Virus record (IMG/VR): IMGVR_UViG_3300037054_000148
Location: 249,598-313,597 of that record
DNA length: 64,000 bases
Direction: 5' to 3' (one strand)
In this document: piece after piece, positions 3,869 to 54,687 of the stretch
How positions within the stretch are numbered: position 1 is the first letter of the stretch
Layout of the letters: each line of letters starts with the position of its first letter
Program-made: the position numbers and the translations under genes
The notes under the pieces: model-generated
Seen by the model: the letters and a program-made list of their open reading frames with translations, nothing else
What the model was told of the DNA's origin: nothing
The model's database searches: none

Positions 3869-4305
3869 AGCGGACCACCCCTATCAAGCTCTTCGAAGGG
3901 GTCTCCCGGTTCTGTTTTGTAATAGGCTCGACGGAGGAATTGGTCATACACATTTGAGCAGTACATCTCAGATCTGATGGCCGGTTCCCCTTCGGGCCAT
4001 GGCCCTTTTATAACAAAAAGTGCGTAGTCTACCGCAGAATAAGGTTCTGTAGCGATAGTCGGCTCGGCCTCTGGCCATCTTCCCTTAATCACTTCATTTG
4101 CGTAAACCACCGAGTCATACGGATCTTTCATGATTGTAGGCTCACCCTTTGGCCATCTTCCCTTAACTACTCGTCTGGCGTATAGAAGGCTACCCCAGGG
4201 GCTACCCAGAACCTTGTTCATGAAGCTCTGAGGCAGCATATCATTCTGCGCTAGACAGATGATCATCTTCCAAGTAAAATGGGACCGGAGCCATGTAGTT
4301 GCCAT
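3865..4305 (-). CDS. WPE(A/G)E-repeat protein
   Basis: Three ~25-aa repeats YA..V.KG.WP..EP.I; same repeat in 47366-48088 and 54723-57470. Confidence 0.75.
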   Translation of the reverse strand: MATTWLRSHFTWKMIICLAQNDMLPQSFMNKVLGSPWGSLLYARRVVKGRWPKGEPTIMKDPYDSVVYANEVIKGRWPEAEPTIATEPYSAVDYALFVIKGPWPEGEPAIRSEMYCSNVYDQFLRRAYYKTEPGDPFEELDRGGPL

Positions 4306-16968: not shown

Positions 16969-17739
16969 ATGCACACTCCACGCTACGGCTGGCACCCAGA
17001 CTTACCTGATTTCCGTGACTTCCGTTTAACTGCGGCAGCCGCACACACGACCACCCCAGATGTGCTGGATCTCCGTCCAAAGATGCCCGTGGTTTACGAC
17101 CAGGGTGATTTAGGAAGCTGCACTGGTAACTCTAGTGCCGCTGCATTCGAGTACGATTTGATTAGGCAAGGATTGCCTAGCTGGACTCCAAGTCGTCTGG
17201 GCATCTACTATGATGAACGAGTCCTTGAAGGGACTGTCAGCACAGATGCGGGGGCACAAATTCGTGATGCTGTCAAAGTCCTAGCCACGAATGGGGCCGC
17301 ACCTGAGACTTTGTGGCCTTATGTCCCAGCAAATTTCGCTATGGCCCCTCCGGCTGTCTATGTGAAGACGGCTGCTCAGGACTTAGCCCTCCAGTATGCC
17401 CGTGTCGATCAATCTCAGCTTGGAATTGAAGGATGCCTGTCTAAGGGCTATCCGGTTATTTTCGGGTTTACCGTATACTCTTCATTTGAATCAGAGGCCG
17501 TAGCACGGACAGGGGTCATGCCGATGCCCTCCTCCAAGGAAAAATGCTTAGGGGGCCACGCAGTGCTTTGTGTCGGCTACGAGCGTTCCAAGCGGATGTT
17601 CATTATCCGTAACTCATGGGGAGTGGGGTGGGGGGATAAGGGATACTTCTATATGCCTTATAACTACCTACTCAACGCTAACCTAGCTGATGACCTTTGG
17701 GCTCTCTACACGGTCGAAGAGGCAGGTAAGCAAGCCTAG
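16969..17739 (+). CDS. Papain-family (C1) cysteine peptidase
   Basis: DQGDLGSCTGN (Gln/Cys), GGHAVLCVGY (His), IRNSWG (Asn). Confidence 0.93.
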   Translation: MHTPRYGWHPDLPDFRDFRLTAAAAHTTTPDVLDLRPKMPVVYDQGDLGSCTGNSSAAAFEYDLIRQGLPSWTPSRLGIYYDERVLEGTVSTDAGAQIRDAVKVLATNGAAPETLWPYVPANFAMAPPAVYVKTAAQDLALQYARVDQSQLGIEGCLSKGYPVIFGFTVYSSFESEAVARTGVMPMPSSKEKCLGGHAVLCVGYERSKRMFIIRNSWGVGWGDKGYFYMPYNYLLNANLADDLWALYTVEEAGKQA

Positions 17740-37946: not shown

Positions 37947-40472
37947 ATGTCTTCCACTAATCCAGTTCCCTACATCCCGCTCTTAGAGGGCTATTCAGGA
38001 TATGTCTATCTCACAAATAGCACGACAGTCACAGGAATAAATTATGCCACTGGAGGGGACCAAGCGGCCACTCAGCCACTAGCCCTTCAGAATAATGTAA
38101 TTGGGTTTTCAAAGGCTCTGGGATCTGGACAGGGAAGATTACAGATCGCTTACGACTCTGTAAGTGACACCACCCAGCTTCAATATATTGGTGGGAGTCC
38201 TACCTCTCCAAATACCTGGGATGCCGCTATGGCTGATAATTTCCCTGTCTCCATTTCACTCACTGACATTGCTTACATAAATGCAGCCAACCAATATGAT
38301 TTGTACACATTTGTGCCCCCCGCCTCTGGGGCAAATGGAGCCGGTGCGGGAGGCTCTCAATTTACCTTTGAAGTGTGGGCTCTTTGTCAACCACAAATCG
38401 CCTCTATTTCCCCGACCAGTATTACGGCGGATGGGTCGGCTCACATTATTACAATTTCTTTGGCTCGAAGGCTTCACAGTTCTCAATCCCCAACTATTTC
38501 ACCCTCCATCACTGGGAGTGGGGTCACGCTTGGCACCCCTACTCCAATAACTAATGCGAACGGGCAGTTGACAGGATGGAGTATGACTGCCACCGCATTA
38601 GCCGCTCAGCCTACTTCTACGCAAAGTATCACTTTCGCTTTGACTGAGAATGCCACTTATCTGAGTGGGGATTCAATCGTCACTAACGCGCTGACCTACC
38701 CATCTAGCACTCAGAGTCTAGGTGTCATCTCAGAGGTCTCTTCATCCATCCCTATTGCCGCCACAGCCGCTACCCTGGTTGGGGGCTCCGGAACAGACGT
38801 TACCCATGGCCTAGTCACTGCCACATCCGGTGTTATCGCCGGAGGATTGACGGCTCAGGTTACCCTTACTTCTGGCACTCTATCAGATTTAACGGCTCCG
38901 GTAAACGTTGTCGCTCTTCCTTACAACTTTGCCACAGGGACGACTTCTTACACGAACCCGACCTTGAAGGCCATTAATAACCGCACCACTATTGCAACAA
39001 TGACTCCAGTCGGAGCCCCCACCATTGTAATTAATGCTCAAGGGAATAACGTTTATCAACAGCAATACTACGCAAATTTTGATACTTCTGCTCTGCTGTT
39101 GGATCCTTCTGGGAGCGCCTACCCTCAATGGCAAATCGGTTACTCCGCAACTGGCCCCACCGTCCCCTATACGAATTGGTTTGGAACCTATGTTAATGGT
39201 AATCTCACTGGGAACACCGCAGCTTACACAGTGTACGCCCTAGTTGGTGGAGATGAGTATGCCTACTCATCGGGTGTGTGGGAGGATGCGGCTGGGAACC
39301 CAGCCATAAACTTGTATTTCAGCGGCACAGTCCAGTTTTATATCTCCCCAAATTGGAACCCGGAAAATGTTATAAACTCTGCTCCAGAAGTGCTTACCTT
39401 GATCCAATACCAAATAGATGGAGGCACACTAACCTCTTCCAACTTAGCTACAACTTATACCGCAGGGAATGGGGATATCGCCATGGGTCTCGCATCCATT
39501 GATACGACAAAGTTCTCAGTGCCGACAGGGAACCACTCAATCACCTGGAAGTTGATCACCGATCTGGATACTGGTGCCACACAAACTCAAGTGCAAACCG
39601 CCACTGTAGCCTTCTCTACAAATCAAAGTGCTATTGGTGGGGCAATCCCTGATTACACCGTCTCCAGCACTTCCGCAACGACTCAATCCTTCGTGCAAAA
39701 CCAAAGCTCTTCTGTCTCCTGGGTACTCACTTACAAACCCAATATTCTATTCGCTGGCAGCTTGAGTTTCGGCATTACGGGACTTCCCTCTACTGGGACG
39801 ACCTTTGTGTTCACCCCTTCCACCCTGAGCCTTCTGCCAGGAGGGACCGCACTCAACACCACACTAACCCTAACAGCCTCAAGCGCACCAGTTGGGAACT
39901 ACCCCATCACCATTCACGCCACATCTGGGGCTTCAGATGACGCTCCTTTCAACGCGCTCTTATCCGTAGAGGCTCAGGTTATTGCTCCTGCCCCCCCTTA
40001 TCAGGAAACCGGCCGCTGCTGCTTCTTAGCTGGCACGAAGATAACAATGGAAAATGGGGTATTAAAAGACATAAAGGAACTAGAGGTAGGAGATAGGGTT
40101 GCCTCCTACGATATTTCTTCTAAAACCATGACCGTAGGGACTGTGGAGTTTATCCATAATCCTATCCGGAGTCATATCAATCATGTACAGTTTGAGGATG
40201 GAAAGGTGCTAAATGTTACCTCTGATCACCCACTTTACACAACTGAAGGTTGGAAATCATTAGATCCGGAATCAACCCAAGTTGGGTATGGCATGACCTG
40301 TAGGAGATTAGCTGAGGGGGATCAGGTCATGAATTTAAAGGGGGATTTCCTTACCATCACCAATATTGAATTTGAAGCTGGAGAGTTCCAAACATACGCT
40401 CCTGGAAGAGTGTCCGACTGCTCTACCTACTTTGCTGATGGCCTCTTAGCCCACAACTGTGGGGGCGGCTAG
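37947..40472 (+). CDS. Virion protein with C-terminal Hint (intein-like) domain
   Basis: CFLAGTKI (40020), TSDHP block B, YFADGLLAHN (40457) followed by CGGG-stop. Confidence 0.88.
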   Translation: MSSTNPVPYIPLLEGYSGYVYLTNSTTVTGINYATGGDQAATQPLALQNNVIGFSKALGSGQGRLQIAYDSVSDTTQLQYIGGSPTSPNTWDAAMADNFPVSISLTDIAYINAANQYDLYTFVPPASGANGAGAGGSQFTFEVWALCQPQIASISPTSITADGSAHIITISLARRLHSSQSPTISPSITGSGVTLGTPTPITNANGQLTGWSMTATALAAQPTSTQSITFALTENATYLSGDSIVTNALTYPSSTQSLGVISEVSSSIPIAATAATLVGGSGTDVTHGLVTATSGVIAGGLTAQVTLTSGTLSDLTAPVNVVALPYNFATGTTSYTNPTLKAINNRTTIATMTPVGAPTIVINAQGNNVYQQQYYANFDTSALLLDPSGSAYPQWQIGYSATGPTVPYTNWFGTYVNGNLTGNTAAYTVYALVGGDEYAYSSGVWEDAAGNPAINLYFSGTVQFYISPNWNPENVINSAPEVLTLIQYQIDGGTLTSSNLATTYTAGNGDIAMGLASIDTTKFSVPTGNHSITWKLITDLDTGATQTQVQTATVAFSTNQSAIGGAIPDYTVSSTSATTQSFVQNQSSSVSWVLTYKPNILFAGSLSFGITGLPSTGTTFVFTPSTLSLLPGGTALNTTLTLTASSAPVGNYPITIHATSGASDDAPFNALLSVEAQVIAPAPPYQETGRCCFLAGTKITMENGVLKDIKELEVGDRVASYDISSKTMTVGTVEFIHNPIRSHINHVQFEDGKVLNVTSDHPLYTTEGWKSLDPESTQVGYGMTCRRLAEGDQVMNLKGDFLTITNIEFEAGEFQTYAPGRVSDCSTYFADGLLAHNCGGG

Positions 40473-40494: not shown

Positions 40495-41187
40495 ATGACT
40501 TCTCCTTATAAATATGCTCTTCCTGGCCCCCCCTTCAACTTTCTGGGGCACATGTCTCAAACCCAGAATAATGCTTTGTATGCTTGGATCAATCGAAACA
40601 GTGCAAATCAACCATTAGCTATGGCGTGGTATCAGATCAGAGCCAACCAATTAAGAAAATCTGCTGGTCTGTTAGAGGGTTACTATGCAACCAAATACCC
40701 AGATCCGTCTGCTCCACAAGCAATGACTCCTAGCTTCCAGAAAGCCGAATGGCAGCCTGGACCTAATGGTCATTTTACCTACGTAAACGGGAATGACCAG
40801 CTTAGTTCCGTAACAGTCAGCAAGATAAAAGACTACTATCGTTATATGATGCAACGTGATGATGAGGGCATGTTCTGGATGAATTGGCTGAGAAACCATA
40901 TAGAGCGGCATGAGGATATGGCTAACTTACACAATGATGCCGTCATCCAAGTCCCACTCCTCCAGACTGAGTTAACTACCATGTTTGGTCTTCCAGAAAA
41001 TCAGAACGTTCTTGTGGATGATATTACCACTCCTGTCGAGGGTGTGAACAACGCCTCCCTACCGGGGCCTTACTTCCGAGTTAACCAGTTAGACCAGCCC
41101 ACCGCCTGGGAACTCTCTCAATTTAGCCATCTATCCAGCGGTAAGGCCATTCCGGGGACACCTCAGCAGACTGGTGCCGGAAGCTAA
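40495..41187 (+). CDS. Hypothetical structural-region protein
   Basis: 230-aa ORF in tail operon. Confidence 0.7.
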   Translation: MTSPYKYALPGPPFNFLGHMSQTQNNALYAWINRNSANQPLAMAWYQIRANQLRKSAGLLEGYYATKYPDPSAPQAMTPSFQKAEWQPGPNGHFTYVNGNDQLSSVTVSKIKDYYRYMMQRDDEGMFWMNWLRNHIERHEDMANLHNDAVIQVPLLQTELTTMFGLPENQNVLVDDITTPVEGVNNASLPGPYFRVNQLDQPTAWELSQFSHLSSGKAIPGTPQQTGAGS

Positions 41188-41226: not shown

Positions 41227-42006
41227 ATGTCCTACGACTTTGATGTGCGCCTATCCCCTTGCAACCACCTTCAGGTGAAGGAGAGGATGACTGTTGATTT
41301 GACAGACCTTCGAACTCTGCTTTACGCCAGTCCTAATCAATATCAGGATGCGGTTCATATCAGAGGAACGGTTGCGGCGAAAGCCTCAGTAAAGTTGTTC
41401 ATCTCCGGTATTGAAGTGCCCCAGAGCCACCCTCAATACGGTTGGGATGTGTGGCCAGATACCTCATTTCCCGCCTCAGCACAGCTTTCGAAAATTATGT
41501 TTCGACAACAGATGCGGCTGACTAACCCGGTGATTGAGATACAGTATATTACTATCGCGGCCTATTGTTTGAAGTGCAATGGGTTTAGTAAAGTGAACGA
41601 TTACACAATCGCTCAGAATGGCTCGTTCTTACACGTTTGGGAGTTCTATAAACTTGTCCAACGGATATACAAGTTTATTTTGACCTCAAACTGCATATTC
41701 TACCCTGCCTTTACTTCCCAACTAAAAAATTTCATTGGGCAGAAATTCTTAGGGACGGAAGACGACATTTCAAATGAGTGTTCGAACGCACTGGACAATT
41801 TGAAGCGGATCCAGTTAGCTCAAAAAAACATACAAGTTTTATCCCCCCAGGAAGTGTTGAAAAACATCGAGAGTATTAGCTCAGTGAGAAATGCCGAAGA
41901 CCCTACAATCATTACAACAAATATGATGGTTTCTTCTTACGGAACCCCCCGTGCGACCCCACTGAGTTTTACGTTACAAACCACGAACAACAATATCCAA
42001 AATTAA
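41227..42006 (+). CDS. Baseplate wedge protein, gp25/GPW-like (tentative)
   Basis: Position before baseplate-J-like gene; KLVQRIYKFILT..FYP..S.L..FIG pattern. Confidence 0.5.
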   Translation: MSYDFDVRLSPCNHLQVKERMTVDLTDLRTLLYASPNQYQDAVHIRGTVAAKASVKLFISGIEVPQSHPQYGWDVWPDTSFPASAQLSKIMFRQQMRLTNPVIEIQYITIAAYCLKCNGFSKVNDYTIAQNGSFLHVWEFYKLVQRIYKFILTSNCIFYPAFTSQLKNFIGQKFLGTEDDISNECSNALDNLKRIQLAQKNIQVLSPQEVLKNIESISSVRNAEDPTIITTNMMVSSYGTPRATPLSFTLQTTNNNIQN

Positions 42007-42016
42007 GAGGTCGAGA

Positions 42017-45000
42017 ATGACAGTCATACCGCAAATTACCCTGAGTCCACTGATCCTCATCAGCCCTACGATGGAGGGCCAAGAGCTTGGTATTGACACG
42101 AACGGGATAGATATGGTCTACCAAGCCTCCACAACTGTTCAGGCCGTAACCGTATCGATTGAGGGAGGTAATTTCACTTCTTTAACCCCCACCTTAATGG
42201 CTGGTTATAACAACTTCACTGTAAGCATCACAGGGATAACCCCTTCGTCCTCTGTCATTCAAGTGCTGGCAGTGGGGACGAGCTACAACCCTGCGGAGCC
42301 ACCAATGACTGGGCCTTACTACGCGACTCCCACTTCTTCATTTGGGCTAGTGTACACTGGCCTCTCTGGATCTCTCCCTGTGCTTAACCCCCCATCGGGC
42401 GTCAGCACCTATAATGGGCTGAATCAGGCACAATTAGAATGGGTGCTCCCCACAACTCCCGGCCTTCTAGGTGTTCGAGTCCAATACAGCACTGATTCCA
42501 CTGGGGTGAATGTTCCTTATCAGCAATATGGGCCGCTGGTAACTCAAATTACCAGGGCTGCCAACAACGTTACTAATTCTGAAACCTCAACAGCGGTTAT
42601 AGGAGATCAGACCACCATCACGACCGTGGACACCACCATCCCTGTCAGCTATAGTTCAGTCATATTCCCGCAATCTATCGCCGGAGGAGCCAACTTTTTC
42701 TATGCGGTCCTCTCTACCGTAGTGCAGGATCCAATAACCAACACGGTATATGAGTCCAATTTCAACGGTCCATTCCAACTCGGGTTTGTTGATCTGCGTC
42801 AAGTAAACCCCTATGACTACCAGTATCTCCAACAGAAAGAGGACATCGCCTCTAGACTGATTAGCTCAGCGATGGCTAACTACCCACAGCTTGATCTAAC
42901 TCCTCGGTCTGAACTTAGAGACCTTCATATCGATCCAATCAGCCTGGAGCTATCTCAGCAATCCGTTAGAGAGTGGTTTGGTAGGTGCTCACAATCCATC
43001 AGTGCAGTGGCAACGATTGATGATTATGATGGAGATGGAGTTTCTGACCCATTTAACACCAGCCCTTTCAAATCCCAAATCGCTACCGCATGGAACTTAT
43101 CTGCCTCTAATACCCAGCTTCTGATTGATAAGCAATTTGACATCTTGGGAGAGAGGGCCGGAATCACCAGAGGTGGGGCCACCCGATCTGTTGCGATGAT
43201 GACCCTCTACACCTATTCCAAACCCACCACACAAGTTACGTTTACCCAATCTGCAATGACCTTCTCTGCCGCTGGAAATAGCCAGTCCCCAGCGGTAAAT
43301 TTTGCTGCGGTGGGGTCAGCAGTTGTGACTTTGCAGAGTATCAATGCGATCTATAGCTCTGCAAATAATTGGTGGAGCGTGGATGTGCCAGCAGAATGTA
43401 CAGTCACTGGCTCCATCGGCAATGTGGGGGCGGGGGCAATCTCTCAGGCTTCTGGTCTTCCCTCCGGATGGCTTTGTATTAATCAGGGACCAGCCACATA
43501 CGGCACTGATCAGCAATCCAACTCATCCTATGCGGTCATGATTAAAAATCGTCTGGTTGTGGGTGTGGATAGTGGTAGCCGGTTAGGGTATCTGAACACC
43601 ACTCTGGCTACTCCAGGAGTCATTGGAGCGAATGTTGTGGCGGCGGGTGATGTGGAAATGGAACGAGATTGGCTCACTCAGCCCACATTGGCCGGTGGAG
43701 GAAAACACATCTTTGGTTGCGTTGATATCTATGTCAGAGGTATAACGGACTCCCAGCAGGCGGATGGACAAGTGTTCTCTTGGGGGAGTAGCTCCTCAAC
43801 TTATAGAAGTTTCACCAGCTACACTCCTCTGCAAATTTCTAATAAGAGTCTTTTGGCGATTAAGCCTGCTTCTACGCTTTCGGGGCTTATCTACACCCCA
43901 ATCGAAATCGTTGCTACACAGGGGACGAACCAGATTTTCTTTGGTGTTCAGACCTGTAAAGTAGATCCAACAACCAACACCATGTATTTAAACCCCACGG
44001 AACTTTGCTATCAACTTACCAATGTGGGTGGGGCGAATGAACAGTACCAGATATTTCAGCTTAATGGTGTGAACGCCACCAATCAGATGGTCATTAATTA
44101 CCTAAATCCGCAGGCACCCAATGTCTCAGTCGTCGGATGGTTGAGGATGCAGACCCCACTTCAGTGCTACCCCACGGCCCAACCTGTTTCCACAGTCTAT
44201 AGCGTAGTGGGAAATGGGGACAGCGGGACTTTATCACCTCTGGGAGTTCGGTTAATTCACAGCCAGGATCCACTGCTTAATGGGTTTTCCAATAAAGCAA
44301 ATGATATAGTTCAGATTGACACCACGGCTAACGCCACCTACCCAAACATTACCCCAACAGTGCTCTCTACCATGCCTGGGCTGGCTCCTGGTTCACGAGT
44401 TCCATTCGCTTTTGTGACAAATGGACCAACTATCGAGCCTATTGATACCGACATGCAGGTGAGTCTTGATAACCAAGGTCGTGTGTACGGCATCAATTCC
44501 GTAAGATCCGCAGACCTGAGCACCGTTTACAAAATAAATGTAGACTATGCGATTATCCCAACAGGGATCCCTTCCTATTCTGGCAACCCTTCAATTTCTA
44601 GCCCTCAGATCGCCCCTACGTGTAACTATAATGCTTACAGTATTCAGTGGCTCCCCTCTGGAAGCATCCCTCTGGGTCAAGAGTTGCTGATCGGATACAA
44701 TAAATATACTCTCCATGAATACTGCACTCTTGTTACCGGAGAATCACAAACACTTACTGGGTCAACTCCTGCCCCACTTGCAAATCCAGGGTTTATTAAG
44801 AACGTGTGGACTCCAGAGTCTTATGGGTACACCGTTATCTCCATGGACTCAGCTTTAGCGTCAGCGTTTATTCCCAAGCAAAATCGGTATATCAAGGTTA
44901 CTTACGACAATGGGTCGGGTCCGACCGTAATGGTGGAAGGGCAGGACTATACCCTCACCATTGACCAGAACACCTATCAGGCGTATGTAGCTAGGATCCT

Positions 45001-45883
45001 TACGGGACGGATTCCTGATAAATCCTCTGTGCTGGTGTCCTACTTCTACAACGAAATGTTCTCGGTGACGACTGGCTACCCAGGCTATATTGAGCAAGTG
45101 GCAAATGCTATCGCCCAGACCAAGAATGCCGGGGGAGATGTGTTGATTAAACAAATGATGGCCAATGCGGTGGACATCATCCTATCGGTAGAACTCAACC
45201 CAAACGTAACTCCGGTGGCCATGGATGGCCAAATTCGAACTGTGCTAGGAGTGGTGTTAAGTAACGCCAGTTCAACTGTCACCCAGTCCGAAGTGATCCG
45301 ACAGGTGAAGTCCATTCCTGGAATTGCAAATGTCATTGTTCCACTGACAAAGTTAGCCAAATCCGATGGATCTTATGACGTTGGGGTTATTATCCCATCT
45401 GGCACCACTTGGATTCCCATCACGCAGGACACCACTTTAGGCAGCCTTCCCTTCGCCGCTAACACATGGATCACTTCGACTGCGACCAAAGTCCTTCCCG
45501 ACCAGACCATCCCATCTGGGGGTCTACCAGACGCCTACGTTGGAATGCTGTATGAGGGGGATCAGTTCAGACGGGCAAGTAGCATTATGGATTTGGTGAC
45601 TAACCCTCCGACTAGCACCACCGATTTGGACGGAGCTTTTTATATCATCGGTGTGGGGGATCAGATCAACTCTATCACCCCTATTCCCTCAGTCTATGAG
45701 GGTTGTATCATCGCCACCTTCCCCTCCTACCTCTCGAACATCACTAAGAGTATTACTCCAAGCGGGTTCAGCTACAAAGTAACCTATCAGGCTTGGCGTG
45801 AGGGTGGGTATCGAGACATCACTCTTAGCTCAACAGAGTATCTTACCCTAGGCAGTGTCACCATTGATTATATAACGTCATGA
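42017..45883 (+). CDS. Baseplate J/gp6-like wedge protein
   Basis: DLTPRSELRDL, GITRGG, VPAEC..TGSIGNVGAGAI, G.D.QSN, G.VDIYV motifs. Confidence 0.75.
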   Translation: MTVIPQITLSPLILISPTMEGQELGIDTNGIDMVYQASTTVQAVTVSIEGGNFTSLTPTLMAGYNNFTVSITGITPSSSVIQVLAVGTSYNPAEPPMTGPYYATPTSSFGLVYTGLSGSLPVLNPPSGVSTYNGLNQAQLEWVLPTTPGLLGVRVQYSTDSTGVNVPYQQYGPLVTQITRAANNVTNSETSTAVIGDQTTITTVDTTIPVSYSSVIFPQSIAGGANFFYAVLSTVVQDPITNTVYESNFNGPFQLGFVDLRQVNPYDYQYLQQKEDIASRLISSAMANYPQLDLTPRSELRDLHIDPISLELSQQSVREWFGRCSQSISAVATIDDYDGDGVSDPFNTSPFKSQIATAWNLSASNTQLLIDKQFDILGERAGITRGGATRSVAMMTLYTYSKPTTQVTFTQSAMTFSAAGNSQSPAVNFAAVGSAVVTLQSINAIYSSANNWWSVDVPAECTVTGSIGNVGAGAISQASGLPSGWLCINQGPATYGTDQQSNSSYAVMIKNRLVVGVDSGSRLGYLNTTLATPGVIGANVVAAGDVEMERDWLTQPTLAGGGKHIFGCVDIYVRGITDSQQADGQVFSWGSSSSTYRSFTSYTPLQISNKSLLAIKPASTLSGLIYTPIEIVATQGTNQIFFGVQTCKVDPTTNTMYLNPTELCYQLTNVGGANEQYQIFQLNGVNATNQMVINYLNPQAPNVSVVGWLRMQTPLQCYPTAQPVSTVYSVVGNGDSGTLSPLGVRLIHSQDPLLNGFSNKANDIVQIDTTANATYPNITPTVLSTMPGLAPGSRVPFAFVTNGPTIEPIDTDMQVSLDNQGRVYGINSVRSADLSTVYKINVDYAIIPTGIPSYSGNPSISSPQIAPTCNYNAYSIQWLPSGSIPLGQELLIGYNKYTLHEYCTLVTGESQTLTGSTPAPLANPGFIKNVWTPESYGYTVISMDSALASAFIPKQNRYIKVTYDNGSGPTVMVEGQDYTLTIDQNTYQAYVARILTGRIPDKSSVLVSYFYNEMFSVTTGYPGYIEQVANAIAQTKNAGGDVLIKQMMANAVDIILSVELNPNVTPVAMDGQIRTVLGVVLSNASSTVTQSEVIRQVKSIPGIANVIVPLTKLAKSDGSYDVGVIIPSGTTWIPITQDTTLGSLPFAANTWITSTATKVLPDQTIPSGGLPDAYVGMLYEGDQFRRASSIMDLVTNPPTSTTDLDGAFYIIGVGDQINSITPIPSVYEGCIIATFPSYLSNITKSITPSGFSYKVTYQAWREGGYRDITLSSTEYLTLGSVTIDYITS

Positions 45884-48088: not shown

Positions 48089-48138
48089 GCTCAGGCTCAA
48101 ACTCCCCGACTATGGGTATCAATATTGAGAGTGTGAGC

Positions 48139-51100
48139 ATGAAGAGAGCATTTGTCCTACCTGAGCAGGGTGTCATTAATATCTATTTCATCCGAGATGA
48201 GCGGCCCCGAATCCAGTGGCTGATTGACTTGGGTATTCCTCGATTTTCAGTATTCATGCTAGAACTCCCTATCCCTTTGGACAACCCAGGACACACCCAG
48301 ATTGTATTTCATGAAGGGACTGCACTTATCCTAGAACAAATCAAGGCTTTCTTATCCGAGACTGAGTTCGGAGAGGATGCGGGGGTCATCAAGGCGATGA
48401 TGCAGGCTATCAAGCAGACCGAGATCGACTTCTACGGAACTGAATTGATGTACGGTTATGAAATCCTGTTCCCTTTGAGCCAGCAATTCTACGATCTAGT
48501 TCATGAGCGAATTGTCAATCAGAAGACGGCCAGTGAAGACTCTGGTGCATGGAGCAGGCTTTATGATGATAACGTCAGTGATGAAGAGTTCTTAGAACGT
48601 CATGCAGGACGGGAAGAGGGCATCTCCAAATCTGTTTGGAGAGCACCGGACACAAATAAGCGTATGATGGTGGACCTGGGCAAACCAGTGCAGAAACGAG
48701 ATAAACAGGAATTAAATGACGCTCGTAAGATAATCGACCGCTACAAGCAGACCATCTACAAGAGCACCCCAGGCCCTTTGTTCGTCATCCTATACGACCG
48801 CAATGGGCTTCCACGAGGCGTTAGTCGTGTAACCAATAAGGGACTGACCAAATGGGCCGATGGCTCTGAAGTACCTAGGGAACTTTTAACTGCATTGATT
48901 GACATCTTTGGGGAACAGGACGCCGATCAAGTCAAAGTGGCTGAAGAGAAGCCTAAAAATATCCCAAAGGATCTGCTCAAAAAACTTCCCGGCATTCACG
49001 AAATATCACCAGAAGGTCAGGATGAAGGGGAGGGGGATAACAATTGGGAGGAGCCTAATGGCTACTCTCAGACCGTCAGGGATCGCTTAAAGCTCCTGAG
49101 AGAGCGAACCGGAATGGAGCTTCCAGTTTTAGGGGAAGGGTCTTCCCGTATGGTCGTCGGGGTAAATGAACATGTTGCAATCAAGCTAGCGATCAATCAG
49201 CCCGGTGTGGCTCAGAACAAAGCCGAACTCAGAATGTATGAGAAGGTTGAGGATTGCACTATTATCACTCGCATTTTTTACTATGATACTGAGTTTCACT
49301 GGCTCGTAGTTGAGCGAGTCCTAAGAGGGGCCACCTATTCAGATTTCGAACGATATGGAGCAACCGACGCCTACAACTTTTGTAAAAAAGTAGAGCGTGG
49401 GGGAACAGAATTTCTTACAGATAGGCAGGCAGTGAAATCTCTTCAGTTCTTATGCCAGACACTTGGTGTTAAATGGTGGGACATTGATCGAGAGAGCCAG
49501 TGGGGGCTGGTCGAACGTAGGGGTGAGCGGTATCCGGTCTTGGTAGACTACGGACTTGATGAAGAGGTGGCCCGACAACACTACAGCAGCAAACTTGCCG
49601 CAGGGTGGGGTAGTTTCATCAATGGTGAATACTGGGTAGATGGCGACTCAGCGAACAACTATGCAGAATGCAGTGGAGACGGGGACTATACCCACGAAAC
49701 CTATGCCAGAGAACAGATTCTCAATGACAAGTGGGACCAAATTCTTAGTGCTTGTCAGCGTCATCTTCAGGAGGCCCACGAAGAAGAAGATGACAACAAC
49801 CCAGGAGAGGTGGAGGAAGAGTGGCGAAAGCTCCATGCGATGAAGTATGGGGAGCCTGACTTTCCAATGGAAGATGTGTTCTTTACCCTCATCTGGGGCT
49901 ATGTTTCGTTAGAAGAGTGCGATGCCATCTTCAATGGTGAATACGACATGTTCAAGAATGAGGTTCGGGAATTCTTCATGCGATTCTACAACCAGATCCG
50001 GGTCGTGGACAAAAATTTCGAAGTGTGGAAACTCACCCCTCGAAACCTTGACACCATCATCGATTGGGTATTTAATGAGAGTGGGCTGGATGAATCCGAC
50101 TTAGCTCAGATGAAGGATGAGGTTTATATTGAGCAATACGAAGGTGGCAGAAAATACGCAGGGATTCCAATTGGGGAGCTTCTAAACATGAAGAACCCAG
50201 GCGAAGTTTGGCGTTATCAAGGAATGACCGTGGCCTCGAAGCAGGCTGCGATGGTTGAACTTCCACACGATAAGGAAGTCAAGCTCCCCCTCTACATGCT
50301 GAAGAAACTCAAACAAATGGCCCAAAAGTTTGATCCCCAGGCTGACTTCCGCTTTGTCGGGGGCTGCGTACGTGATATGCTCCTGGACCGCAAACCAAAG
50401 GATTTCGATGTCGTCACCAACACCACGGCTGACACTTTACAGAAGATGGGTTTGGAGAACGTGGGAAAGGCTTTTCCTGTCTACCTCTACCATGACCCCA
50501 CGTATGGCCAGATTGAAATCGCTGTGGCTCGTTCGGAAGAAAAGACTGGGGTGGGGCATAAGGACTTTGATATCGTTCCAACCGGCAATTTCGAAGGAGA
50601 TATGGTTCGCAGAGACCTGAATGTGAACGCCATGATGGTGGATGCGGATGGAAAACTCTTCGGCCCCACTGAAGCCCTACAGAACATCAAGGACAAGACC
50701 CTCCAGAATGTCAGTGAGAAGTTCGCTGAGGATGCGTTGCGCGTTTTCCGAGCCGCACGATTCAGTGCTCAGTTTGGGTCAGAGTGGAGGGTCAGTCCCC
50801 AACTGGTGGACATGATGCACCGGATGCAACCTGAACTTCAATATCTTCCGGCTGATCGTATCAGGGAAGAAACTAAACGTGCGCTGGTCGGTAAAGTTCC
50901 CATGCGCTTCTTTGAAGTGCTGCGTGAGGGGGGTTGCCTGGAACCCTGGTTCAGCGAGTTCGATCAAAACTGGAGTCAAATAGCTGAATCGGTCAACTAC
51001 GGTCATCAGAATGGCTGGGATTTTGACTTGCAGATCGTTGGGATTGAATCACAGCTTCCCATTCCGGATAGCCTGAATAACCGGCTTGGTCTGTCGAATC

Positions 51101-54100
51101 AGATCAAGCAGGCGGCTCAGTTTGTTAAAAAAAATAGGGGGAATATTAAACAAGCCAGGGCTCTTCCTAAAGAAACAGTAGTTGGGATCGTTCAAAGCGG
51201 GGTTAGAGGTGCGTTTGAGTTCGTGCAGCTACTGGACTGTGCGTTGCTCGGGACTAACCCAGACTCCAAGGACTTCTTACTCAAATGTGCGGAAGCCATC
51301 AAGGGCACCGATATGACAGGAGTGACAAGCCGCAATGAGGCTACAGAACGTTTGGTAGGGGCCATTTCAAAGGTCGGACACTCTAAGAGAGCTATGTCAG
51401 CACAGCAGGCAGTAAATGAGGCTGTAAAATTGATCACTCAAGAAGAGATCAAGCAGCCCAAACCGTGGCAAACTCCGCAATTTAGAGCGTGGTTTGGAGA
51501 CTCCAAAGTCGTAAATAAGGATGGAACCCCCAAGCGCGTCATGCATGGAACCACTCATGAATTCGATCAATTTTCCTTGCACAATGCATTTGAGGAAGGC
51601 TGGTATGGCAAGGGGTTTTATTTTACAGATTGTGAAAAGGATGTGGAGAACTACGCTTCCTTAGAGGGGCCAGATCTCACGGCCAGGATAGAGTTGGTCG
51701 CTGAGCGTCTAATGGATGACGGGGGCGACTGGGAAGAGAGCATGGGAGAGGAGCATGAGGACAACTCAAAGAGTATCCGTGAGTTAGCTCATCAAAAAGC
51801 TCAAGAAATGATTGCTGGGAAGCATCACGGGACAGTTTACCTCACCTATTTGAAGATGGAGAACCCTGTTATTGTTACCCCCAACGGAGGAACCTATCTT
51901 GGGGGGGACAGTGGATCTGACCCAGAGAACGAGGATGAATGGCTAGATGGCCCCGAAACCACCAAGCTATACGAGGCGATTCAGGCTGCTTGCTCACAGT
52001 TTGGCCTAAATGAGAAACGTATCTGGGATAGCCAACTATCTGATAGGCTGTTGGAAGGCTGCACAGCTTACGAGTTTGAAAAAGACTTACGGGAGAATGA
52101 TGAAACTTTAGATGCAGAGGGGGGAGCGGGTCCAGTGATATCCGCCATCTATGAGGCTATGGGGTTTGATGGGATCATTATGGATGCTAAGGCTCAATTC
52201 GGAAATGGGAATACGGGGATGAAGATGTCTCCTAAGACCCGCCATTACATCGTATGGAACCCCCGTCAGGTTAAGTCGGCTATAGGGAACAAAGGGACGT
52301 TTGACCCCTCCAGTCCCCTGCTAACGGCTGCGGTAAAGCCTAGAACGCAGGGTGGAGGATTGAACGTAGATCCTGTAGAACAGATAGTTGATGAGGAAAC
52401 CCCAGAGAAAGAGAAGACCACCCCTCTGACTCAGGAGGAAGAGGATATGGCTAAGTCGCTGGCGGATAAGCGAATCAGCCCTGCGGCTCCAAGCAACGTG
52501 CTTAAGCCCGGTGCGATTGATCCGCATAGTCATGCCCAGAGTCAGCCCGACTTGAAAAAAATGATGGAGAACGAAAAGTTCGAGTTCAACGTCAACCTAG
52601 CGGTAGACAACTATCCTAACTTCAAATACATGCGAGAAGGTCGCTATAAGCAATTTGATGCTCATGAGAAGGCTGAGGAAATCATCAATCACATGGCTGC
52701 AAATTTGATTTGGCTCTATAAGACCTGGGATAAGGCCCTGTCAGATAGAGCCAAACTCTGGTATGTAGGGGGTAACCGTATAATCCATCGGTGGGCTGAT
52801 AAGTTCCATCTAGACCCGCATAAAGTGGCAGCAGTGATTGCCGCTCTATCCCCACAGGCACATTGGTTCCAGAATGTTACAACCGCAGAGCGTACCATCG
52901 AAGCCTTGGTAGAACTCAAAGACTTCCGCTGGGATTGGAAGATGGACCGTGTGGCCCTGCATCGTAACTGGACCCCTGAAGACTTGGAAGATGAGATGAA
53001 GGAATCGGTCAAAGTCGGAGAGGCTGCGGAGAAGAAGAAAAACAAAAAGGAGAGTGCCAAGAAAGAGAAAGAGCCCAAGATCAAGTGGTCCGCAGCACTG
53101 GCTATCCCCCTGCTTCGTGGCAAGACTCTGAATGAAGTAATGACCGAAAACAGTCCCGAATCAGGCCGAGAGTACTTAGCCTCTGTGTGGATCAGGGCCT
53201 GGGCCGAAGGGCACACAGATAACAAACTCCGTGAAGTCACCCCAGAGGGGAACTTTGGGGACTGGTTTAAGACTGGAAAGGCTGACGCCAAAGTCCGTTG
53301 GACATCCTTCGCTGCCATTACCAAAGCTGTCCGGATTTTAGAGTCTAACTCTGTCAACGATATCTCTAAATTGGTTGGGACTAACCACAAGGTTCGCTCA
53401 TTCTATAACAATCTCATCGCCCCTATGGCGGATGAAGGGGATGTAACAATTGATACCCATGCAGTTGCTGCCGCTCTTATTCGTCCGCTGAGTGGAGCTT
53501 CTGTAGAGGTGGCTCATAACTTTGGCAGTGGGTTTACCCCCAAAAAGGATAAGAACGGCAAAATTTGGGTTTGGGATGAGGATGAGGGGGAGTATGTCGA
53601 GGGGGATCCTGATGCAGAAAAGATCCCAGGACCAAGCAACAGTTCAATCACCGGCCTCAACGGACTCTATGCTCTTTACGCTGAGGCATACCGTAGGGCC
53701 GCGAAAGATCCTGCGGTGGGGGTTCTACCCCGCGAACTCCAGTCGATCACCTGGGAGGCTGTGAGAGCCCTTTTCAACCCGGCTGACAAACGGGACAAGA
53801 AGTTCATACGTATGGCAAACGAGATCTGGGCCTCGCACGATCCAGAGGATGGAGGGCTCAATGCCGAACAAGCTAGGGAAAAAATCACCGCTGTTATCAA
53901 AGAACGAAGAGGTGGAAAAGAAGTCTTCGAAACCCCAAGTTGGATCGGATCCGATCCTGAGATTCATGGAGACGCACAAGGTTCCTCTTACAAGAGAGGC
54001 TTATCTGGGTCTGGCATACCCGGATCACAAGCCGGGGGCATTACTCCCACCGGAATTGGAGGCGGAGCTTCCCGAAGAACTTCGAGAAAAATAAACTCCC

Positions 54101-54687
54101 CACTGCTGATGAAGATTGGAGCCCTGACGTTCAAACATGAGCACAGAGACTACCGATATGGACAGAACTACTTCGTCTTGTTTGCTTTTAACGGCAAGTT
54201 CTGTGTGGGTGAGATTCGCTACTCAGTTTATGAGGACGGCCCCTATATTGATAACATTGATGTAGGGAACCATGTTCTAACCAATCTAGAAACAAAAAAG
54301 CTCATGTCAGAACGGTTGCGTAAGGCAACTGATCCAACAGAGTATGTGGGCCATGAGATGCTCAAGTATTTACAAAAACTCTATCCGGATAAAGACCTTG
54401 GGGTGAGACATGCCGATGCCGCTAAGGGGCTAGATTTTGATGAAATGGAAACTGAATATGCCCCTCTGATGGATGAAAAAGAGGCGCTGACTAAAGAGCA
54501 ACAAAACATTGACCAAGCTCTAGAGGAAAACTCCAAAAGGAACGTAGCTTATCAAGACTGGGAGGATCATTATAAGAAACTCATGGATCGTTGGAATTGG
54601 ATTGACGACAGGCTCTACGAGATTGAGCAGGCTCTGAACGTCTACCCCACTCCGGTAAGACAGAAACGTCTTATCAGAACAACATAA
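48139..54687 (+). CDS. Large polyvalent protein: kinase-like, CCA-adding nucleotidyltransferase, ADP-ribosyltransferase-like, glycosylase-like and GNAT-like domains
   Basis: LGEGSSR..AIKLA..E..VDYG (~49130-49560); VGGCVRD..KDFDV, RRDLNVNAM, EDALRVFRAARF (~50350-51350); FRAWFGDSKVV..MHGT..GFYFT..QVKSAIGNKGTFD (~51470-52310); AALSPQ..KVRSFYNN..VTIDTHA..ELQSITW (~52600-53950); GNAT-like tail is tentative. Confidence 0.88.
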   Translation: MKRAFVLPEQGVINIYFIRDERPRIQWLIDLGIPRFSVFMLELPIPLDNPGHTQIVFHEGTALILEQIKAFLSETEFGEDAGVIKAMMQAIKQTEIDFYGTELMYGYEILFPLSQQFYDLVHERIVNQKTASEDSGAWSRLYDDNVSDEEFLERHAGREEGISKSVWRAPDTNKRMMVDLGKPVQKRDKQELNDARKIIDRYKQTIYKSTPGPLFVILYDRNGLPRGVSRVTNKGLTKWADGSEVPRELLTALIDIFGEQDADQVKVAEEKPKNIPKDLLKKLPGIHEISPEGQDEGEGDNNWEEPNGYSQTVRDRLKLLRERTGMELPVLGEGSSRMVVGVNEHVAIKLAINQPGVAQNKAELRMYEKVEDCTIITRIFYYDTEFHWLVVERVLRGATYSDFERYGATDAYNFCKKVERGGTEFLTDRQAVKSLQFLCQTLGVKWWDIDRESQWGLVERRGERYPVLVDYGLDEEVARQHYSSKLAAGWGSFINGEYWVDGDSANNYAECSGDGDYTHETYAREQILNDKWDQILSACQRHLQEAHEEEDDNNPGEVEEEWRKLHAMKYGEPDFPMEDVFFTLIWGYVSLEECDAIFNGEYDMFKNEVREFFMRFYNQIRVVDKNFEVWKLTPRNLDTIIDWVFNESGLDESDLAQMKDEVYIEQYEGGRKYAGIPIGELLNMKNPGEVWRYQGMTVASKQAAMVELPHDKEVKLPLYMLKKLKQMAQKFDPQADFRFVGGCVRDMLLDRKPKDFDVVTNTTADTLQKMGLENVGKAFPVYLYHDPTYGQIEIAVARSEEKTGVGHKDFDIVPTGNFEGDMVRRDLNVNAMMVDADGKLFGPTEALQNIKDKTLQNVSEKFAEDALRVFRAARFSAQFGSEWRVSPQLVDMMHRMQPELQYLPADRIREETKRALVGKVPMRFFEVLREGGCLEPWFSEFDQNWSQIAESVNYGHQNGWDFDLQIVGIESQLPIPDSLNNRLGLSNQIKQAAQFVKKNRGNIKQARALPKETVVGIVQSGVRGAFEFVQLLDCALLGTNPDSKDFLLKCAEAIKGTDMTGVTSRNEATERLVGAISKVGHSKRAMSAQQAVNEAVKLITQEEIKQPKPWQTPQFRAWFGDSKVVNKDGTPKRVMHGTTHEFDQFSLHNAFEEGWYGKGFYFTDCEKDVENYASLEGPDLTARIELVAERLMDDGGDWEESMGEEHEDNSKSIRELAHQKAQEMIAGKHHGTVYLTYLKMENPVIVTPNGGTYLGGDSGSDPENEDEWLDGPETTKLYEAIQAACSQFGLNEKRIWDSQLSDRLLEGCTAYEFEKDLRENDETLDAEGGAGPVISAIYEAMGFDGIIMDAKAQFGNGNTGMKMSPKTRHYIVWNPRQVKSAIGNKGTFDPSSPLLTAAVKPRTQGGGLNVDPVEQIVDEETPEKEKTTPLTQEEEDMAKSLADKRISPAAPSNVLKPGAIDPHSHAQSQPDLKKMMENEKFEFNVNLAVDNYPNFKYMREGRYKQFDAHEKAEEIINHMAANLIWLYKTWDKALSDRAKLWYVGGNRIIHRWADKFHLDPHKVAAVIAALSPQAHWFQNVTTAERTIEALVELKDFRWDWKMDRVALHRNWTPEDLEDEMKESVKVGEAAEKKKNKKESAKKEKEPKIKWSAALAIPLLRGKTLNEVMTENSPESGREYLASVWIRAWAEGHTDNKLREVTPEGNFGDWFKTGKADAKVRWTSFAAITKAVRILESNSVNDISKLVGTNHKVRSFYNNLIAPMADEGDVTIDTHAVAAALIRPLSGASVEVAHNFGSGFTPKKDKNGKIWVWDEDEGEYVEGDPDAEKIPGPSNSSITGLNGLYALYAEAYRRAAKDPAVGVLPRELQSITWEAVRALFNPADKRDKKFIRMANEIWASHDPEDGGLNAEQAREKITAVIKERRGGKEVFETPSWIGSDPEIHGDAQGSSYKRGLSGSGIPGSQAGGITPTGIGGGASRRTSRKINSPLLMKIGALTFKHEHRDYRYGQNYFVLFAFNGKFCVGEIRYSVYEDGPYIDNIDVGNHVLTNLETKKLMSERLRKATDPTEYVGHEMLKYLQKLYPDKDLGVRHADAAKGLDFDEMETEYAPLMDEKEALTKEQQNIDQALEENSKRNVAYQDWEDHYKKLMDRWNWIDDRLYEIEQALNVYPTPVRQKRLIRTT

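What the first reader, a model, noticed from the sequence alone, without database searches (positions are those of the whole stretch)
40011..40472. Intact intein-like Hint domain with a 4-residue C-extein (CGGG) on a tail protein
Seen: GRC|CFLAGT...TSDH...AHN|CGGG-stop, a 146-aa Hint domain retaining Cys1, block-B TxxH, terminal His-Asn and Cys+1. Known: these residues support splicing or cleavage in inteins and bacterial intein-like domains. Inference: splicing would leave ...TGRC-CGGG (vicinal cysteines plus a Gly-Gly-Gly end). Alternatively the thioester could covalently link this Ig-rich protein to another virion part or a host molecule.
Basis: partly seen in the sequence, partly recalled or inferred. 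Interest (0 to 1): 0.6.

Follow-up and report, generated by a model that had tools for sequence, protein, structure and literature searches.

The report
Self-removing Hint domain ending a phage tail protein
A jumbo-phage tail/baseplate protein ends in an intact 146-residue self-processing (Hint) domain of the bacterial-intein-like type followed by only four residues (CGGG), so the domain probably cuts itself off after translation; the chemistry is known, but its use at the tip of a phage tail protein has not been described.

Summary
ORF 37947-40472 (+, 841 aa) of a 313.6-kb jumbo phage ends in a 146-aa Hint domain (Cys692 to Asn837). It has Cys1, block-B T-S-D-H, terminal His-Asn, Cys+1 and a 4-residue C-extein, CGGG.

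By profile and by predicted fold, its nearest relatives are bacterial intein-like (BIL) domains: Tetrahymena BUBL BIL2 and Clostridium thermocellum BIL. Canonical inteins are more distant.

The gene sits in a baseplate module syntenic with Tunturiibacter phage Tunturi_5.

- **Orthologues with the Hint domain:** those 62-99% identical across the Hint, and one distant orthologue at 47%, keep a Hint of exactly 146 aa. Four of five lineages keep Cys+1, and the distant one ends in CGGG again. One has a 12-nt insertion that puts Arg at +1.
- **Orthologues without it:** two lineages lack the domain and stop 1-2 residues past the junction, with unchanged gene order.
- **The wider family:** Lys at +1 dominates (62%). 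Terminal copies ending ...HNK-stop are common in viral contigs.

Most likely the domain removes itself. Here that is probably by cis-splicing, leaving ...GRC-CGGG, with cleavage by-products. It is dispensable, and may be an assembly aid or a passenger. Cross-linking through the thioester, as in BUBL, remains a minority possibility. Nothing has been tested at the bench.

The parts
37947..40472 (+). Gene for the 841-aa tail/baseplate-associated protein (P0001), stop codon included
   Evidence: ORF list and translation. The N-terminal 285 aa are homologous to Tunturi_5 gp244 'minor tail protein'.
37947..40019 (+). N-extein, aa 1-691, ending ...APAPPYQETGRC. This is the part shared with Hint-less orthologues of 692-703 aa.
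   Evidence: Alignment A1. The Hint-less alleles P0006/L015-L017 and P0007/L004 end 1-2 residues past this point.
40017..40019 (+). Cys-1 (C691), the first Cys of the 'CC' junction
   Evidence: Invariant in Hint-bearing orthologues and absent from Hint-less ones. Cys at -1 occurs in 53 of 239 family domains.
40020..40457 (+). BIL-type Hint domain, C692-N837, 146 aa
   Evidence: Pfam Hint, AXH and PT-HINT matches. PDB profile search: BIL2 at 3e-25 and C. thermocellum BIL at 2e-17. AF2 pLDDT 89.6. Foldseek TM 0.82-0.88 to 6tmm/6y75.
40020..40022 (+). Catalytic Cys1 (C692), start of block A: C-F-L-A-G-T-K-I
   Evidence: Alignment A2. Residue 1 is Cys in 237 of 239 family domains.
40218..40229 (+). 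Block B: T758-S-D-H761 (T67 and H70 in Hint numbering)
   Evidence: Thr and His are invariant columns of A2. Position.
40452..40457 (+). Terminal His836-Asn837 (block G)
40458..40472 (+). C-extein Cys838-Gly-Gly-Gly841 plus the TAG stop
   Evidence: In orthologues the C-extein is CGGGGSGS (a 2-nt indel away), CAGGGS, RQDFCGN, and CGGG again in the distant L011.
40495..41187 (+). Conserved 230-aa downstream gene, which follows directly in both Hint-bearing and Hint-less relatives (context)
41227..45883 (+). Baseplate protein (259 aa) and baseplate wedge / Baseplate_J-like subunit (1288 aa) (context)
   Evidence: 34% and 40% identity to Tunturi_5 gp242 and gp241. Weak Pfam Baseplate_J match.

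Best explanation
The last 150 residues of this jumbo-phage tail/baseplate protein are a catalytically intact Hint autoprocessing module of the bacterial-intein-like (BIL, A-type-like) lineage. It carries its own minimal flanks: Cys-1 on one side and Cys+1-Gly-Gly-Gly-stop on the other.

Proposed mechanism:
1. After translation, Cys692 attacks the Cys691 carbonyl (N-S acyl shift, assisted by T758/H761) and forms a thioester.
2. Because Cys838 sits at +1, the acyl group most likely moves to it.
3. Asn837 cyclises (assisted by His836), and an S-N shift follows.
4. The products are a 695-aa mature protein ending ...GRC-CGGG and a free 146-aa Hint domain. Hydrolytic N- and C-cleavage products (a 691-aa protein and free CGGG) are expected as by-products.

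The net effect is removal of the domain. The mature protein is almost the same length as in orthologues that never had the domain (692 aa).

The domain is dispensable. Its role is either a removable folding or assembly aid, analogous to the S74 intramolecular-chaperone domains of tail fibres, or a near-neutral passenger cassette.

Shown: the domain, its class, its residues, its conservation, its presence/absence among orthologues and its genomic context. Inferred: every chemical step and the biological role.
For: - **Motifs and fold.**
- **Class.** The nearest solved relatives by profile and by fold are BIL2 of Tetrahymena BUBL1 (E 3e-25; TM 0.82-0.88) and C. thermocellum BIL (E 2e-17). DnaB mini-inteins come later, at 1e-11.
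- **Splicing competence of BILs.** BIL domains become efficient splicers when given a +1 nucleophile (PMC7664689). Here Cys+1 is natural.
- **Conservation.** All orthologue Hints are exactly 146 aa and keep C1, TxxH and HN. Cys+1 is kept in 4 of 5 lineages. The most distant orthologue (Hint 47% identical, neighbouring genes 36-38%) again ends in CGGG, with different codons.
- **Purifying selection.** Hint dN is 0.279, against a flank dS of about 1.3.
- **A clade on phage tail proteins.** In a tree of 327 related domains, the tail-protein Hints cluster with the terminal Hint of an unrelated jumbo-phage tail-fibre protein that ends HN|CQ-stop.
- **Dispensability.** Hint-less alleles have identical synteny and stop 1-2 residues after the junction.
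- **A common architecture.** 38 of 155 nearest representatives and 29 of 70 IMG/VR ORFs have 12 or fewer residues after the last Hint.
Against: - No biochemical evidence exists.
- BIL domains mostly cleave rather than splice (PMC7664689; PMC7765530).
- Lys, not Cys, is the family's usual +1 residue.
- One orthologue has Arg at +1.
- The C-extein tolerates a frameshifting 2-nt indel between strains that are 99% identical, so the exact tail is not critical.
- The Hint evolves about 11 times faster at the protein level than the N-extein in one pair.
- Loss in two lineages shows little or no fitness need, which fits a passenger as well as it fits a helper.
Confidence: 0.6

Rival explanations
1. 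Thioester-driven intermolecular ligation, as in BUBL. The Hint activates the C-terminus of the tail protein. The acyl group then passes to a lysine, or to an N-terminal cysteine, of another baseplate or fibre protein or of a host surface molecule, and covalently fixes the protein.
For: - The closest solved relative, Tetrahymena BUBL1 BIL2, conjugates its N-extein to lysines of other proteins by forming an isopeptide bond (PMC8616854; structural match).
- Lys is the dominant +1 residue in the family, at 149 of 239 domains.
- The Hint sits at the end of the variable C-terminal part of a virion protein; only the N-terminal 285 aa are shared with Tunturi_5 gp244.
Against: - A cis Cys+1 four residues from the stop should capture the thioester before any outside nucleophile does.
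- Hint-less orthologues with the same neighbours evidently assemble without such a link.
- No partner has been identified.
- Inteins with HN and Cys+1 normally process quickly in the cytoplasm.
Confidence: 0.1
2. A purely selfish or neutral cassette. This would be a mini-intein-like element, carrying its own -1 and +1 residues, that landed at the 3' end of the gene. It persists only because it splices itself out harmlessly and gives the phage no benefit.
For: - Presence is patchy among close relatives: Hint-less P0006 is 90% identical to Hint-bearing P0004 across the N-extein.
- The same genome carries two canonical inteins, in the RNR large subunit (with LAGLIDADG) and in a UvrD helicase.
- The protein substitution rate is elevated, and the Hint and N-extein trees disagree for P0003.
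- An indel is tolerated in the C-extein.
Against: - There is no homing endonuclease, and the site is not conserved.
- The nearest relatives are BIL domains, which are not regarded as mobile (PMC7765530).
- A terminal domain can be lost by a single nonsense mutation near the junction. Yet it is retained, at exactly 146 aa, with all catalytic residues and CGGG, down to 47% identity.
- This rival shares the mechanism of the best explanation and differs only in the reason the domain is there.
Confidence: 0.25
3. A non-catalytic structural or binding domain that stays on the virion, with the Hint fold reused as in AXH domains.
For: The top Pfam hit is formally AXH (E 6e-12). The profile also hits ataxin-1 AXH structures at about 1e-14.
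Against: C1, T-x-x-H and H-N are all kept in every orthologue. The AXH matches cover only the N-terminal two thirds, whereas the BIL matches cover the full length and score better.
Confidence: 0.05

Closest known systems
Bacterial intein-like (BIL) domains, A-type (Amitai et al. 2003; C. thermocellum BIL, PDB 2lwy)
   Same: - Best full-length sequence and fold matches among bacterial proteins (E 2e-17; TM 0.75/0.87).
- About 140-150 aa, with no endonuclease.
- Cys1, TxxH and terminal His-Asn.
- Located in a variable, non-conserved part of a surface-type protein.
- Related copies often occur in tandem arrays.
   Different: - BILs are characterised as lacking a +1 nucleophile and giving mainly cleavage (PMC7664689). 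This one has Cys+1, conserved in most orthologues.
- The host is a phage virion protein.
- The domain is terminal, with a 4-residue C-extein.
BIL2 of the Tetrahymena thermophila BUBL1 polyubiquitin-like locus (PDB 6tmm, 6y75)
   Same: Closest solved structure (28% identity, TM 0.82-0.88, profile E 3e-25), with the same catalytic motifs.
   Different: BIL2 sits between two ubiquitin-like domains and ligates the upstream one to lysines (PMC8616854). Here there is no Ubl domain, no downstream domain, and Cys rather than Lys chemistry at +1.
Canonical class-1 mini-inteins (e.g. Ssp/Npu DnaB, gp41-1)
   Same: The full residue set for splicing (Cys1, TxxH, HN, Cys+1), the same fold (TM about 0.70-0.75) and mini-intein size.
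   Different: - Not inserted in a conserved site of an essential enzyme.
- The C-extein is 4 residues, not a protein half.
- Intein-free alleles simply end there.
- No homing endonuclease.
- Sequence is closer to BILs.
- The same genome has two true inteins, in RNR and UvrD, for contrast.
Hedgehog C-terminal autoprocessing (Hog) domain
   Same: A Hint domain placed at the C-terminal end of a protein, whose job is to activate and release the N-terminal part through a thioester.
   Different: Hog has a sterol-recognition region and lacks the HN/+1 splicing end. It transfers to cholesterol. The structural match is weaker (1at0, TM 0.65).
Peptidase S74 intramolecular-chaperone domains of phage tail fibres and tailspikes
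   Same: A self-cleaving C-terminal domain on phage tail fibre or spike proteins, discarded after assembly (Iyer et al. 2021, PMC7824862). This is a functional analogy for the 'removable helper' reading.
   Different: Unrelated fold and chemistry (Ser-Lys dyad). No sequence match here.

Membership tests
Hint (Hedgehog/intein) superfamily | Hint fold with block A, B, F and G motifs | tested here: met
   Pfam PF01079 above its cut-off. AF2 model at pLDDT 89.6. 66 PDB Hint/intein matches at E<=1e-3.
Canonical class-1 intein | Cys/Ser at position 1, block-B TxxH, terminal His-Asn, and Cys/Ser/Thr at +1 | tested here: met
   C692, T758..H761, H836-N837 and C838. One orthologue has Arg at +1.
Canonical class-1 intein | In-frame insertion inside a conserved host-protein site, with a functional C-extein that splicing restores; intein-free alleles are collinear across the site | tested here: not met
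   The C-extein is 4 residues. Hint-less orthologues terminate 1-2 residues after the junction. The region is the variable C-terminal part of the protein.
Canonical class-1 intein | Homing endonuclease domain, or other evidence of homing | tested here: not met
   146 aa with no insert between blocks B and F. In contrast, the RNR intein of the same genome carries LAGLIDADG.
Canonical class-1 intein | Demonstrated protein splicing | not testable with these tools
   Needs expression and mass analysis.
BIL domain (A-type) | Closer in sequence and structure to BIL domains than to inteins or Hog domains | tested here: met
   Profile E 3e-25 (BUBL BIL2) and 2e-17 (Cth BIL), against 1e-11 for the best intein. 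Foldseek gives the same order.
BIL domain (A-type) | Conserved C-terminal His-Asn | tested here: met
   The definition follows PMC7765530.
BIL domain (A-type) | No nucleophile at +1 | tested here: not met
   Cys838 in the window and Cys in 4 of 5 orthologue lineages. The wider family does fit: K at 149 of 239 and C at 12 of 239.
BIL domain (A-type) | Resides in variable regions of non-conserved (surface or secreted) proteins | tested here: met
   It lies at the end of the variable C-terminal part of a tail protein, and is present or absent among orthologues.
Pretoxin HINT (PT-HINT) of polymorphic toxins | Hint immediately upstream of a C-terminal toxin domain | tested here: not met
   Only CGGG follows. 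PF07591 scores 26.3 bits, below the 27.7 cut-off, on the protein; it scores 29.1 in the six-frame scan.
Hedgehog Hog domain | Sterol-recognition region after the Hint, and no HN/+1 splice end | tested here: not met
   There is no sequence after the Hint beyond 4 residues, and HN-Cys is present.

The most novel reading that the evidence does not exclude
Phage virion proteins use terminal BIL-type Hint domains as built-in, ATP-independent ligases. The thioester made at the end of this tail protein would be passed to a lysine or cysteine of a neighbouring baseplate or fibre subunit, or of the host surface. That would weld the jumbo-phage tail together, or weld it to its receptor, as BUBL BIL2 welds ubiquitin-like domains to targets. 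The many '...HNK-stop' terminal Hints in viral contigs would belong to the same system.
Probability: 0.1. Interest if true: 0.8.

Novelty: new variant of a known kind. Interest (0 to 1): 0.45.

Why it matters
Inteins in phages are known from replication and packaging enzymes, and BIL domains from bacterial surface proteins and a ciliate ubiquitin-like locus.

Here a BIL-lineage domain with a complete splicing residue set sits at the very end of a tail protein, followed by only four residues. Related terminal Hints turn out to be frequent in viral contigs (29 of 70 sampled ORFs), including on another jumbo-phage tail fibre. I found no paper describing this arrangement.

If the domain is a removable assembly aid, it would be a second, chemically distinct answer to the problem that S74 chaperone domains solve. 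If it ligates, it would be a new way of building covalent virions.

A compact, naturally terminal Hint with a 4-residue C-extein is also a practical candidate for protein-engineering tags. The Hint-less natural alleles provide ready-made controls.

Tried and rejected
- **Close phage matches.** Megablast of the gene against 50,697 GenBank phages found nothing. tblastn found only the N-terminal match to Tunturi_5 and weak Hint matches to helicase inteins of Vibrio phages.
- **PHROGs.** No family for the whole protein or for its N-extein. The Hint alone hits phrog_21587, of unknown function, weakly.
- **ESM Atlas.** The feature search on the N-extein gave no usable hit.
- **Full-length AF2 model.** With the 7-row alignment it was poor (pLDDT 45.6). 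It was not used for fold search, so 'Ig-rich' stays unverified.
- **Read-through or frameshift into the next ORF.** Rejected. The next gene (start 40495) is in another frame, 22 nt downstream. It begins with a conserved N-terminus (M-T-S/Y-P-Y) in the closer relatives, Hint-bearing and Hint-less alike; L005 and the distant L011 begin differently.
- **Gly codons of the C-extein acting as a ribosome-binding site for the next gene.** Rejected for the window because of the spacing. The CGGG codons also differ between the window and L011.
- **Toxin-release (PT-HINT) reading.** Rejected, because no toxin domain follows.
- **'Vicinal Cys' as a special feature.** Rejected, because Cys at -1 occurs in 22% of family domains whatever the +1 residue.
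- **Recombination versus acceleration for the divergent Hint of P0003.** Unresolved. dS is saturated at 1.3-3.9, so the two cannot be separated.
- **Missing DNA.** ENA DNA for P0004 and P0006 was not available. IMG/VR loci L015-L017 stood in for the Hint-less allele.
Full report
**What is there**

The window is the last 64 kb of a 313,597-bp IMG/VR jumbo-phage record. ORF 37947-40472 (+) encodes an 841-aa protein, P0001. Its end reads ...YQETGRC|CFLAGTKITMENG...NVTSDHPLY...FADGLLAHN|CGGG-stop. Exact positions come:

| Element | Residues | Nucleotides |
|---|---|---|
| N-extein | aa 1-691 | 37947-40019 |
| Cys-1 | C691 | 40017-40019 |
| Hint domain (146 aa) | C692-N837 | 40020-40457 |
| Block B | T758-S-D-H761 | 40218-40229 |
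| Terminal His-Asn | H836-N837 | 40452-40457 |
| C-extein | C838-G-G-G841 | 40458-40469 |
| Stop | | 40470-40472 |

Start 40011 is the Gly689 codon of 'GRC'.

The domain is real:
- Pfam Hint matches at E 9.4e-10, above its cut-off. There are cross-matches to AXH, PT-HINT, Vint and Intein_splicing.
- An AF2 model built on a 12-row alignment has mean pLDDT 89.6.

**What kind of Hint domain**

A profile of the domain and its relatives (alignment A2) was searched against all PDB sequences. The hits rank as follows:
- BIL2 domain of the Tetrahymena thermophila BUBL1 locus (6tmm/6y75): E 3e-25.
- Clostridium thermocellum bacterial intein-like domain (2lwy): E 2e-17.
- Ataxin-1 AXH: about 1e-14, covering the N-terminal two thirds only.
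- Ssp DnaB mini-intein: 1e-11.

Foldseek on the model gives the same order. BIL2 scores TM 0.82-0.88 at 28% identity, 2lwy scores 0.75/0.87, DnaB, gp41-1 and RecA mini-inteins score about 0.70-0.75, and Hedgehog 1at0 scores 0.65.

So by descent the domain belongs to the BIL lineage, while it carries the full residue set of a class-1 intein.

BIL domains are described as lacking the +1 nucleophile and producing mainly N- and C-cleavage. They become efficient splicers after a single mutation that supplies one (PMC7664689; PMC7765530). BIL2 ligates its N-extein, a ubiquitin-like domain, to lysines of other proteins through an isopeptide bond (PMC8616854).

**Context**

The protein lies in a tail/baseplate module:
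- Two giant upstream ORFs carry He_PIG Ig-like domains.
- Downstream come a 230-aa gene, a 259-aa gene and a 1288-aa gene with a weak Baseplate_J match.
- The order matches Tunturiibacter phage Tunturi_5, a 308.7-kb phage of a soil acidobacterium.
- P0001 aa 6-285 match its gp244 'minor tail protein' (28%, E 2e-17).
- The 259-aa protein matches its baseplate protein (34%).
- The 1288-aa protein matches its baseplate wedge subunit (40% over the full length).

gp244 is 418 aa and has no Hint. Only the N-terminal third is shared. The Hint therefore sits at the end of the variable, presumably distal, part of the protein.

No Ig family is detected in P0001 itself. The full-length AF2 model is poor (pLDDT 45.6), apart from a beta domain at aa ~150-260. 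'Ig-rich' is unverified.

**Orthologues: presence, absence and flanks**

A word-indexed search of 5.8 billion proteins found seven relatives (alignment A1). IMG/VR gave further loci.

Hint-bearing forms:

| Form | Identity | C-extein |
|---|---|---|
| P0002 / L002 | 99% overall | CGGGGSGS |
| P0003 / L005 | 94% N-extein, 62% Hint | RQDFCGN |
| P0004 | 78% N-extein, 69% Hint | CAGGGS |
| L011 (distant orthologue at a contig start) | 47% Hint; neighbouring genes 38% and 36% | CGGG |

Details of the flanks:
- L011 again reads GC|CFLAGT...AHN|CGGG-stop, with different codons.
- All of these Hints are exactly 146 aa.
- The window and L002 differ in the C-extein by a 2-nt indel that shifts the frame.
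- P0003 has a 12-nt insertion between the Asn and Cys codons, which puts Arg at +1.

Hint-less forms:
- P0006 and the IMG/VR loci L015-L017 are 692 aa, 79% identical to P0001 and 90% identical to Hint-bearing P0004. They end ...GRGY or ...GQGY, followed by two stop codons, and the 230-aa gene starts 10 nt later.
- P0007/L004 is 703 aa and 48% identical, with a downstream gene 65% identical.

Hint-less L004 is closer to the window than Hint-bearing L011, and Hint-less P0006 is nested beside P0004. The simplest history is therefore an ancestral Hint lost at least twice. Repeated gain cannot be excluded.

**Selection**

Between the window and L005:
- the N-extein has dN 0.025 and dS about 1.3;
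- the Hint has dN 0.279 with saturated dS.

The Hint is thus under purifying selection, at roughly 0.2 relative to the flank dS. It changes about 11 times faster at the protein level than the body of the protein.

Nucleotide identity drops from 79-88% in the flanks to 57-69% across the Hint. P0003's Hint is equally distant (62%) from P0001 and P0004, although its N-extein is 94% identical to P0001. This means either exchange of the 3' module or acceleration after the +1 change. Synonymous saturation prevents a decision.

**The wider family**

An exhaustive HMMER search of 1.84 billion representatives found 4,719 proteins at E<=1e-3. Among the 150 best plus the orthologues:
- 115 of 155 proteins carry two to seven tandem copies.
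- Residue 1 is Cys in 237 of 239 complete domains.
- The -1 residue is Ser in 73, Cys in 53 and Gly in 29.
- The +1 residue is Lys in 149, Arg in 24, Ala in 16 and Cys in only 12.
- 38 proteins end within 12 residues of the last His-Asn, typically ...VHNK-stop.

In IMG/VR, 29 of 70 scorable Hint-bearing ORFs are terminal in this sense. PHROG 21587, of unknown function, carries the Hint at the end of its profile.

So a terminal BIL-type Hint with a tiny C-extein is a common but uncharacterised architecture in phage-derived sequence. A Cys-Cys junction is a family habit rather than a peculiarity of this gene.

What sets the tail-protein clade apart is the nucleophile at +1. In a FastTree of 327 domains, the Hints of P0001, P0004, P0003 and L011 group together (support 0.70-0.83) with the terminal Hint of P0020. 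P0020 is a 791-aa protein on a 243-kb contig, lying between T4 gp15- and gp13-like genes. Its N-terminus hits PHROG tail families at 1e-18, and it ends HN|CQ-stop. Two unrelated small proteins also end HN|CGGPCGW and HN|CGGGGGGG....

**Mechanism, and how sure**

The catalytic residues are complete and conserved, so autoprocessing is the expected behaviour. I put this at about 0.75.

The family background is BIL, and BILs splice efficiently once given a +1 nucleophile. This clade keeps Cys+1 followed by small residues. I therefore consider cis-splicing to ...GRC-CGGG (695 aa) the most likely main route, at about 0.45 on its own, with hydrolytic N- and C-cleavage as by-products. Either way the Hint is removed, and the mature protein is nearly the same length as the natural Hint-less version (692 aa).

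Why the domain is there is less clear:
- **Against a purely selfish element.** There is no endonuclease and no conserved insertion site, and the ancestry is BIL. A terminal domain could be shed by one nonsense mutation, yet it persists with an invariant length and an intact active site down to 47% identity.
- **For a passenger, or at most a mild helper.** It was lost twice, it evolves fast, its C-extein is indel-tolerant, and the same genome holds two true inteins: one in the RNR large subunit, with LAGLIDADG, and one in a UvrD helicase.
- **The functional analogy for a helper.** S74 self-cleaving chaperone domains do this job on tail fibres (PMC7824862).
- **The cross-linking reading.** It has a genuine precedent in BIL2, but a cis Cys+1 and viable Hint-less relatives argue against it. 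I give it about 0.1.

**Literature**

Full-text searches found no description of a Hint or BIL domain on a phage tail protein:
- 'Hint domain' + phage + tail gave 13 papers, all concerning inteins in enzymes or unrelated matters.
- 'intein-like' + 'tail fiber' gave none.
- The jumbo-phage comparative survey mentions inteins only in essential enzymes, and S74 domains on fibres.

Subscription-only papers, including Amitai et al. 2003 and Dassa et al. 2004, could not be read. Their content is cited through the reviews above.

**Verdict**

The feature is a real, conserved BIL-lineage Hint with intein-type ends, sitting at the tip of a jumbo-phage tail protein. This is a new variant of a known kind, of moderate interest, with a clear bench test.

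Noticed in passing
Own genome outside the window: G000:C1:50232-51218 (-) and ~105792-105911 (-) (loci L006, L007): The same phage carries two canonical inteins. One is in the ribonucleotide reductase large subunit, with a LAGLIDADG endonuclease. The other is in a UvrD-type helicase.
   Followed up: partly
window 48112-54687 (+): A 2191-aa 'polyvalent' protein combines a poly(A) polymerase head domain with its RNA-binding domain, an ART-PolyVal ADP-ribosyltransferase and DUF7178 repeats.
   Followed up: no
window 16969-17739 (+) and 8947-9957 (+): A papain-family cysteine protease (PF00112, E 5e-14) and a full-length DUF3326 protein (E 7e-52) are encoded in the phage.
   Followed up: no
P0020 (ENA ERZ1426850, 243-kb contig; no DNA held): Another jumbo-phage tail-fibre-like protein has a long run of CTGxC-type repeats, flagged as a radical-SAM-target Cxxx repeat (PF27846). 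Two tandem terminal Hint domains follow the repeats. A 634-aa radical SAM enzyme is encoded two genes downstream. This points to a possibly cross-linked, RiPP-like tail fibre.
   Followed up: partly
window 40458-40472 versus L002 4459-4485: Two phages that are 99% identical differ by a 2-nt indel inside the C-extein. It changes CGGG-stop into CGGGGSGS-stop.
   Followed up: yes
L005 ~3997-4008: A 12-nt insertion (encoding RQDF) lies exactly between the Asn and Cys+1 codons of the orthologue P0003. That orthologue's Hint is also unusually diverged (62%, against 94% for the N-extein).
   Followed up: partly
P0010-P0012 and many IMG/VR loci (e.g. L020, L022-L025, L036, L046, L048, L057): A recurrent viral protein family of about 750-970 aa has an uncharacterised N-terminal part and two to four tandem Hint domains running to the last residue (...VHNK-stop or ...VLVSDES...). 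It matches PHROG 21587, of unknown function.
   Followed up: partly
P0001 aa 693-797: Pfam AXH (the ataxin-1/HBP1 module) is formally the top Pfam hit, at 46.5 bits against a cut-off of 33. The domain profile also hits ataxin-1 AXH crystal structures at about 1e-14. BIL-type Hints and AXH are thus close enough in sequence to cause misannotation.
   Followed up: no
window 24001-48000: GC skew is clearly negative (-0.05 to -0.17) across the block of giant Thr/Ser/Gly-rich structural genes, and positive on both sides of it. All the large structural ORFs between 22083 and 59785, which span this block and the positive-skew stretch that follows it, are on the + strand.
   Followed up: no
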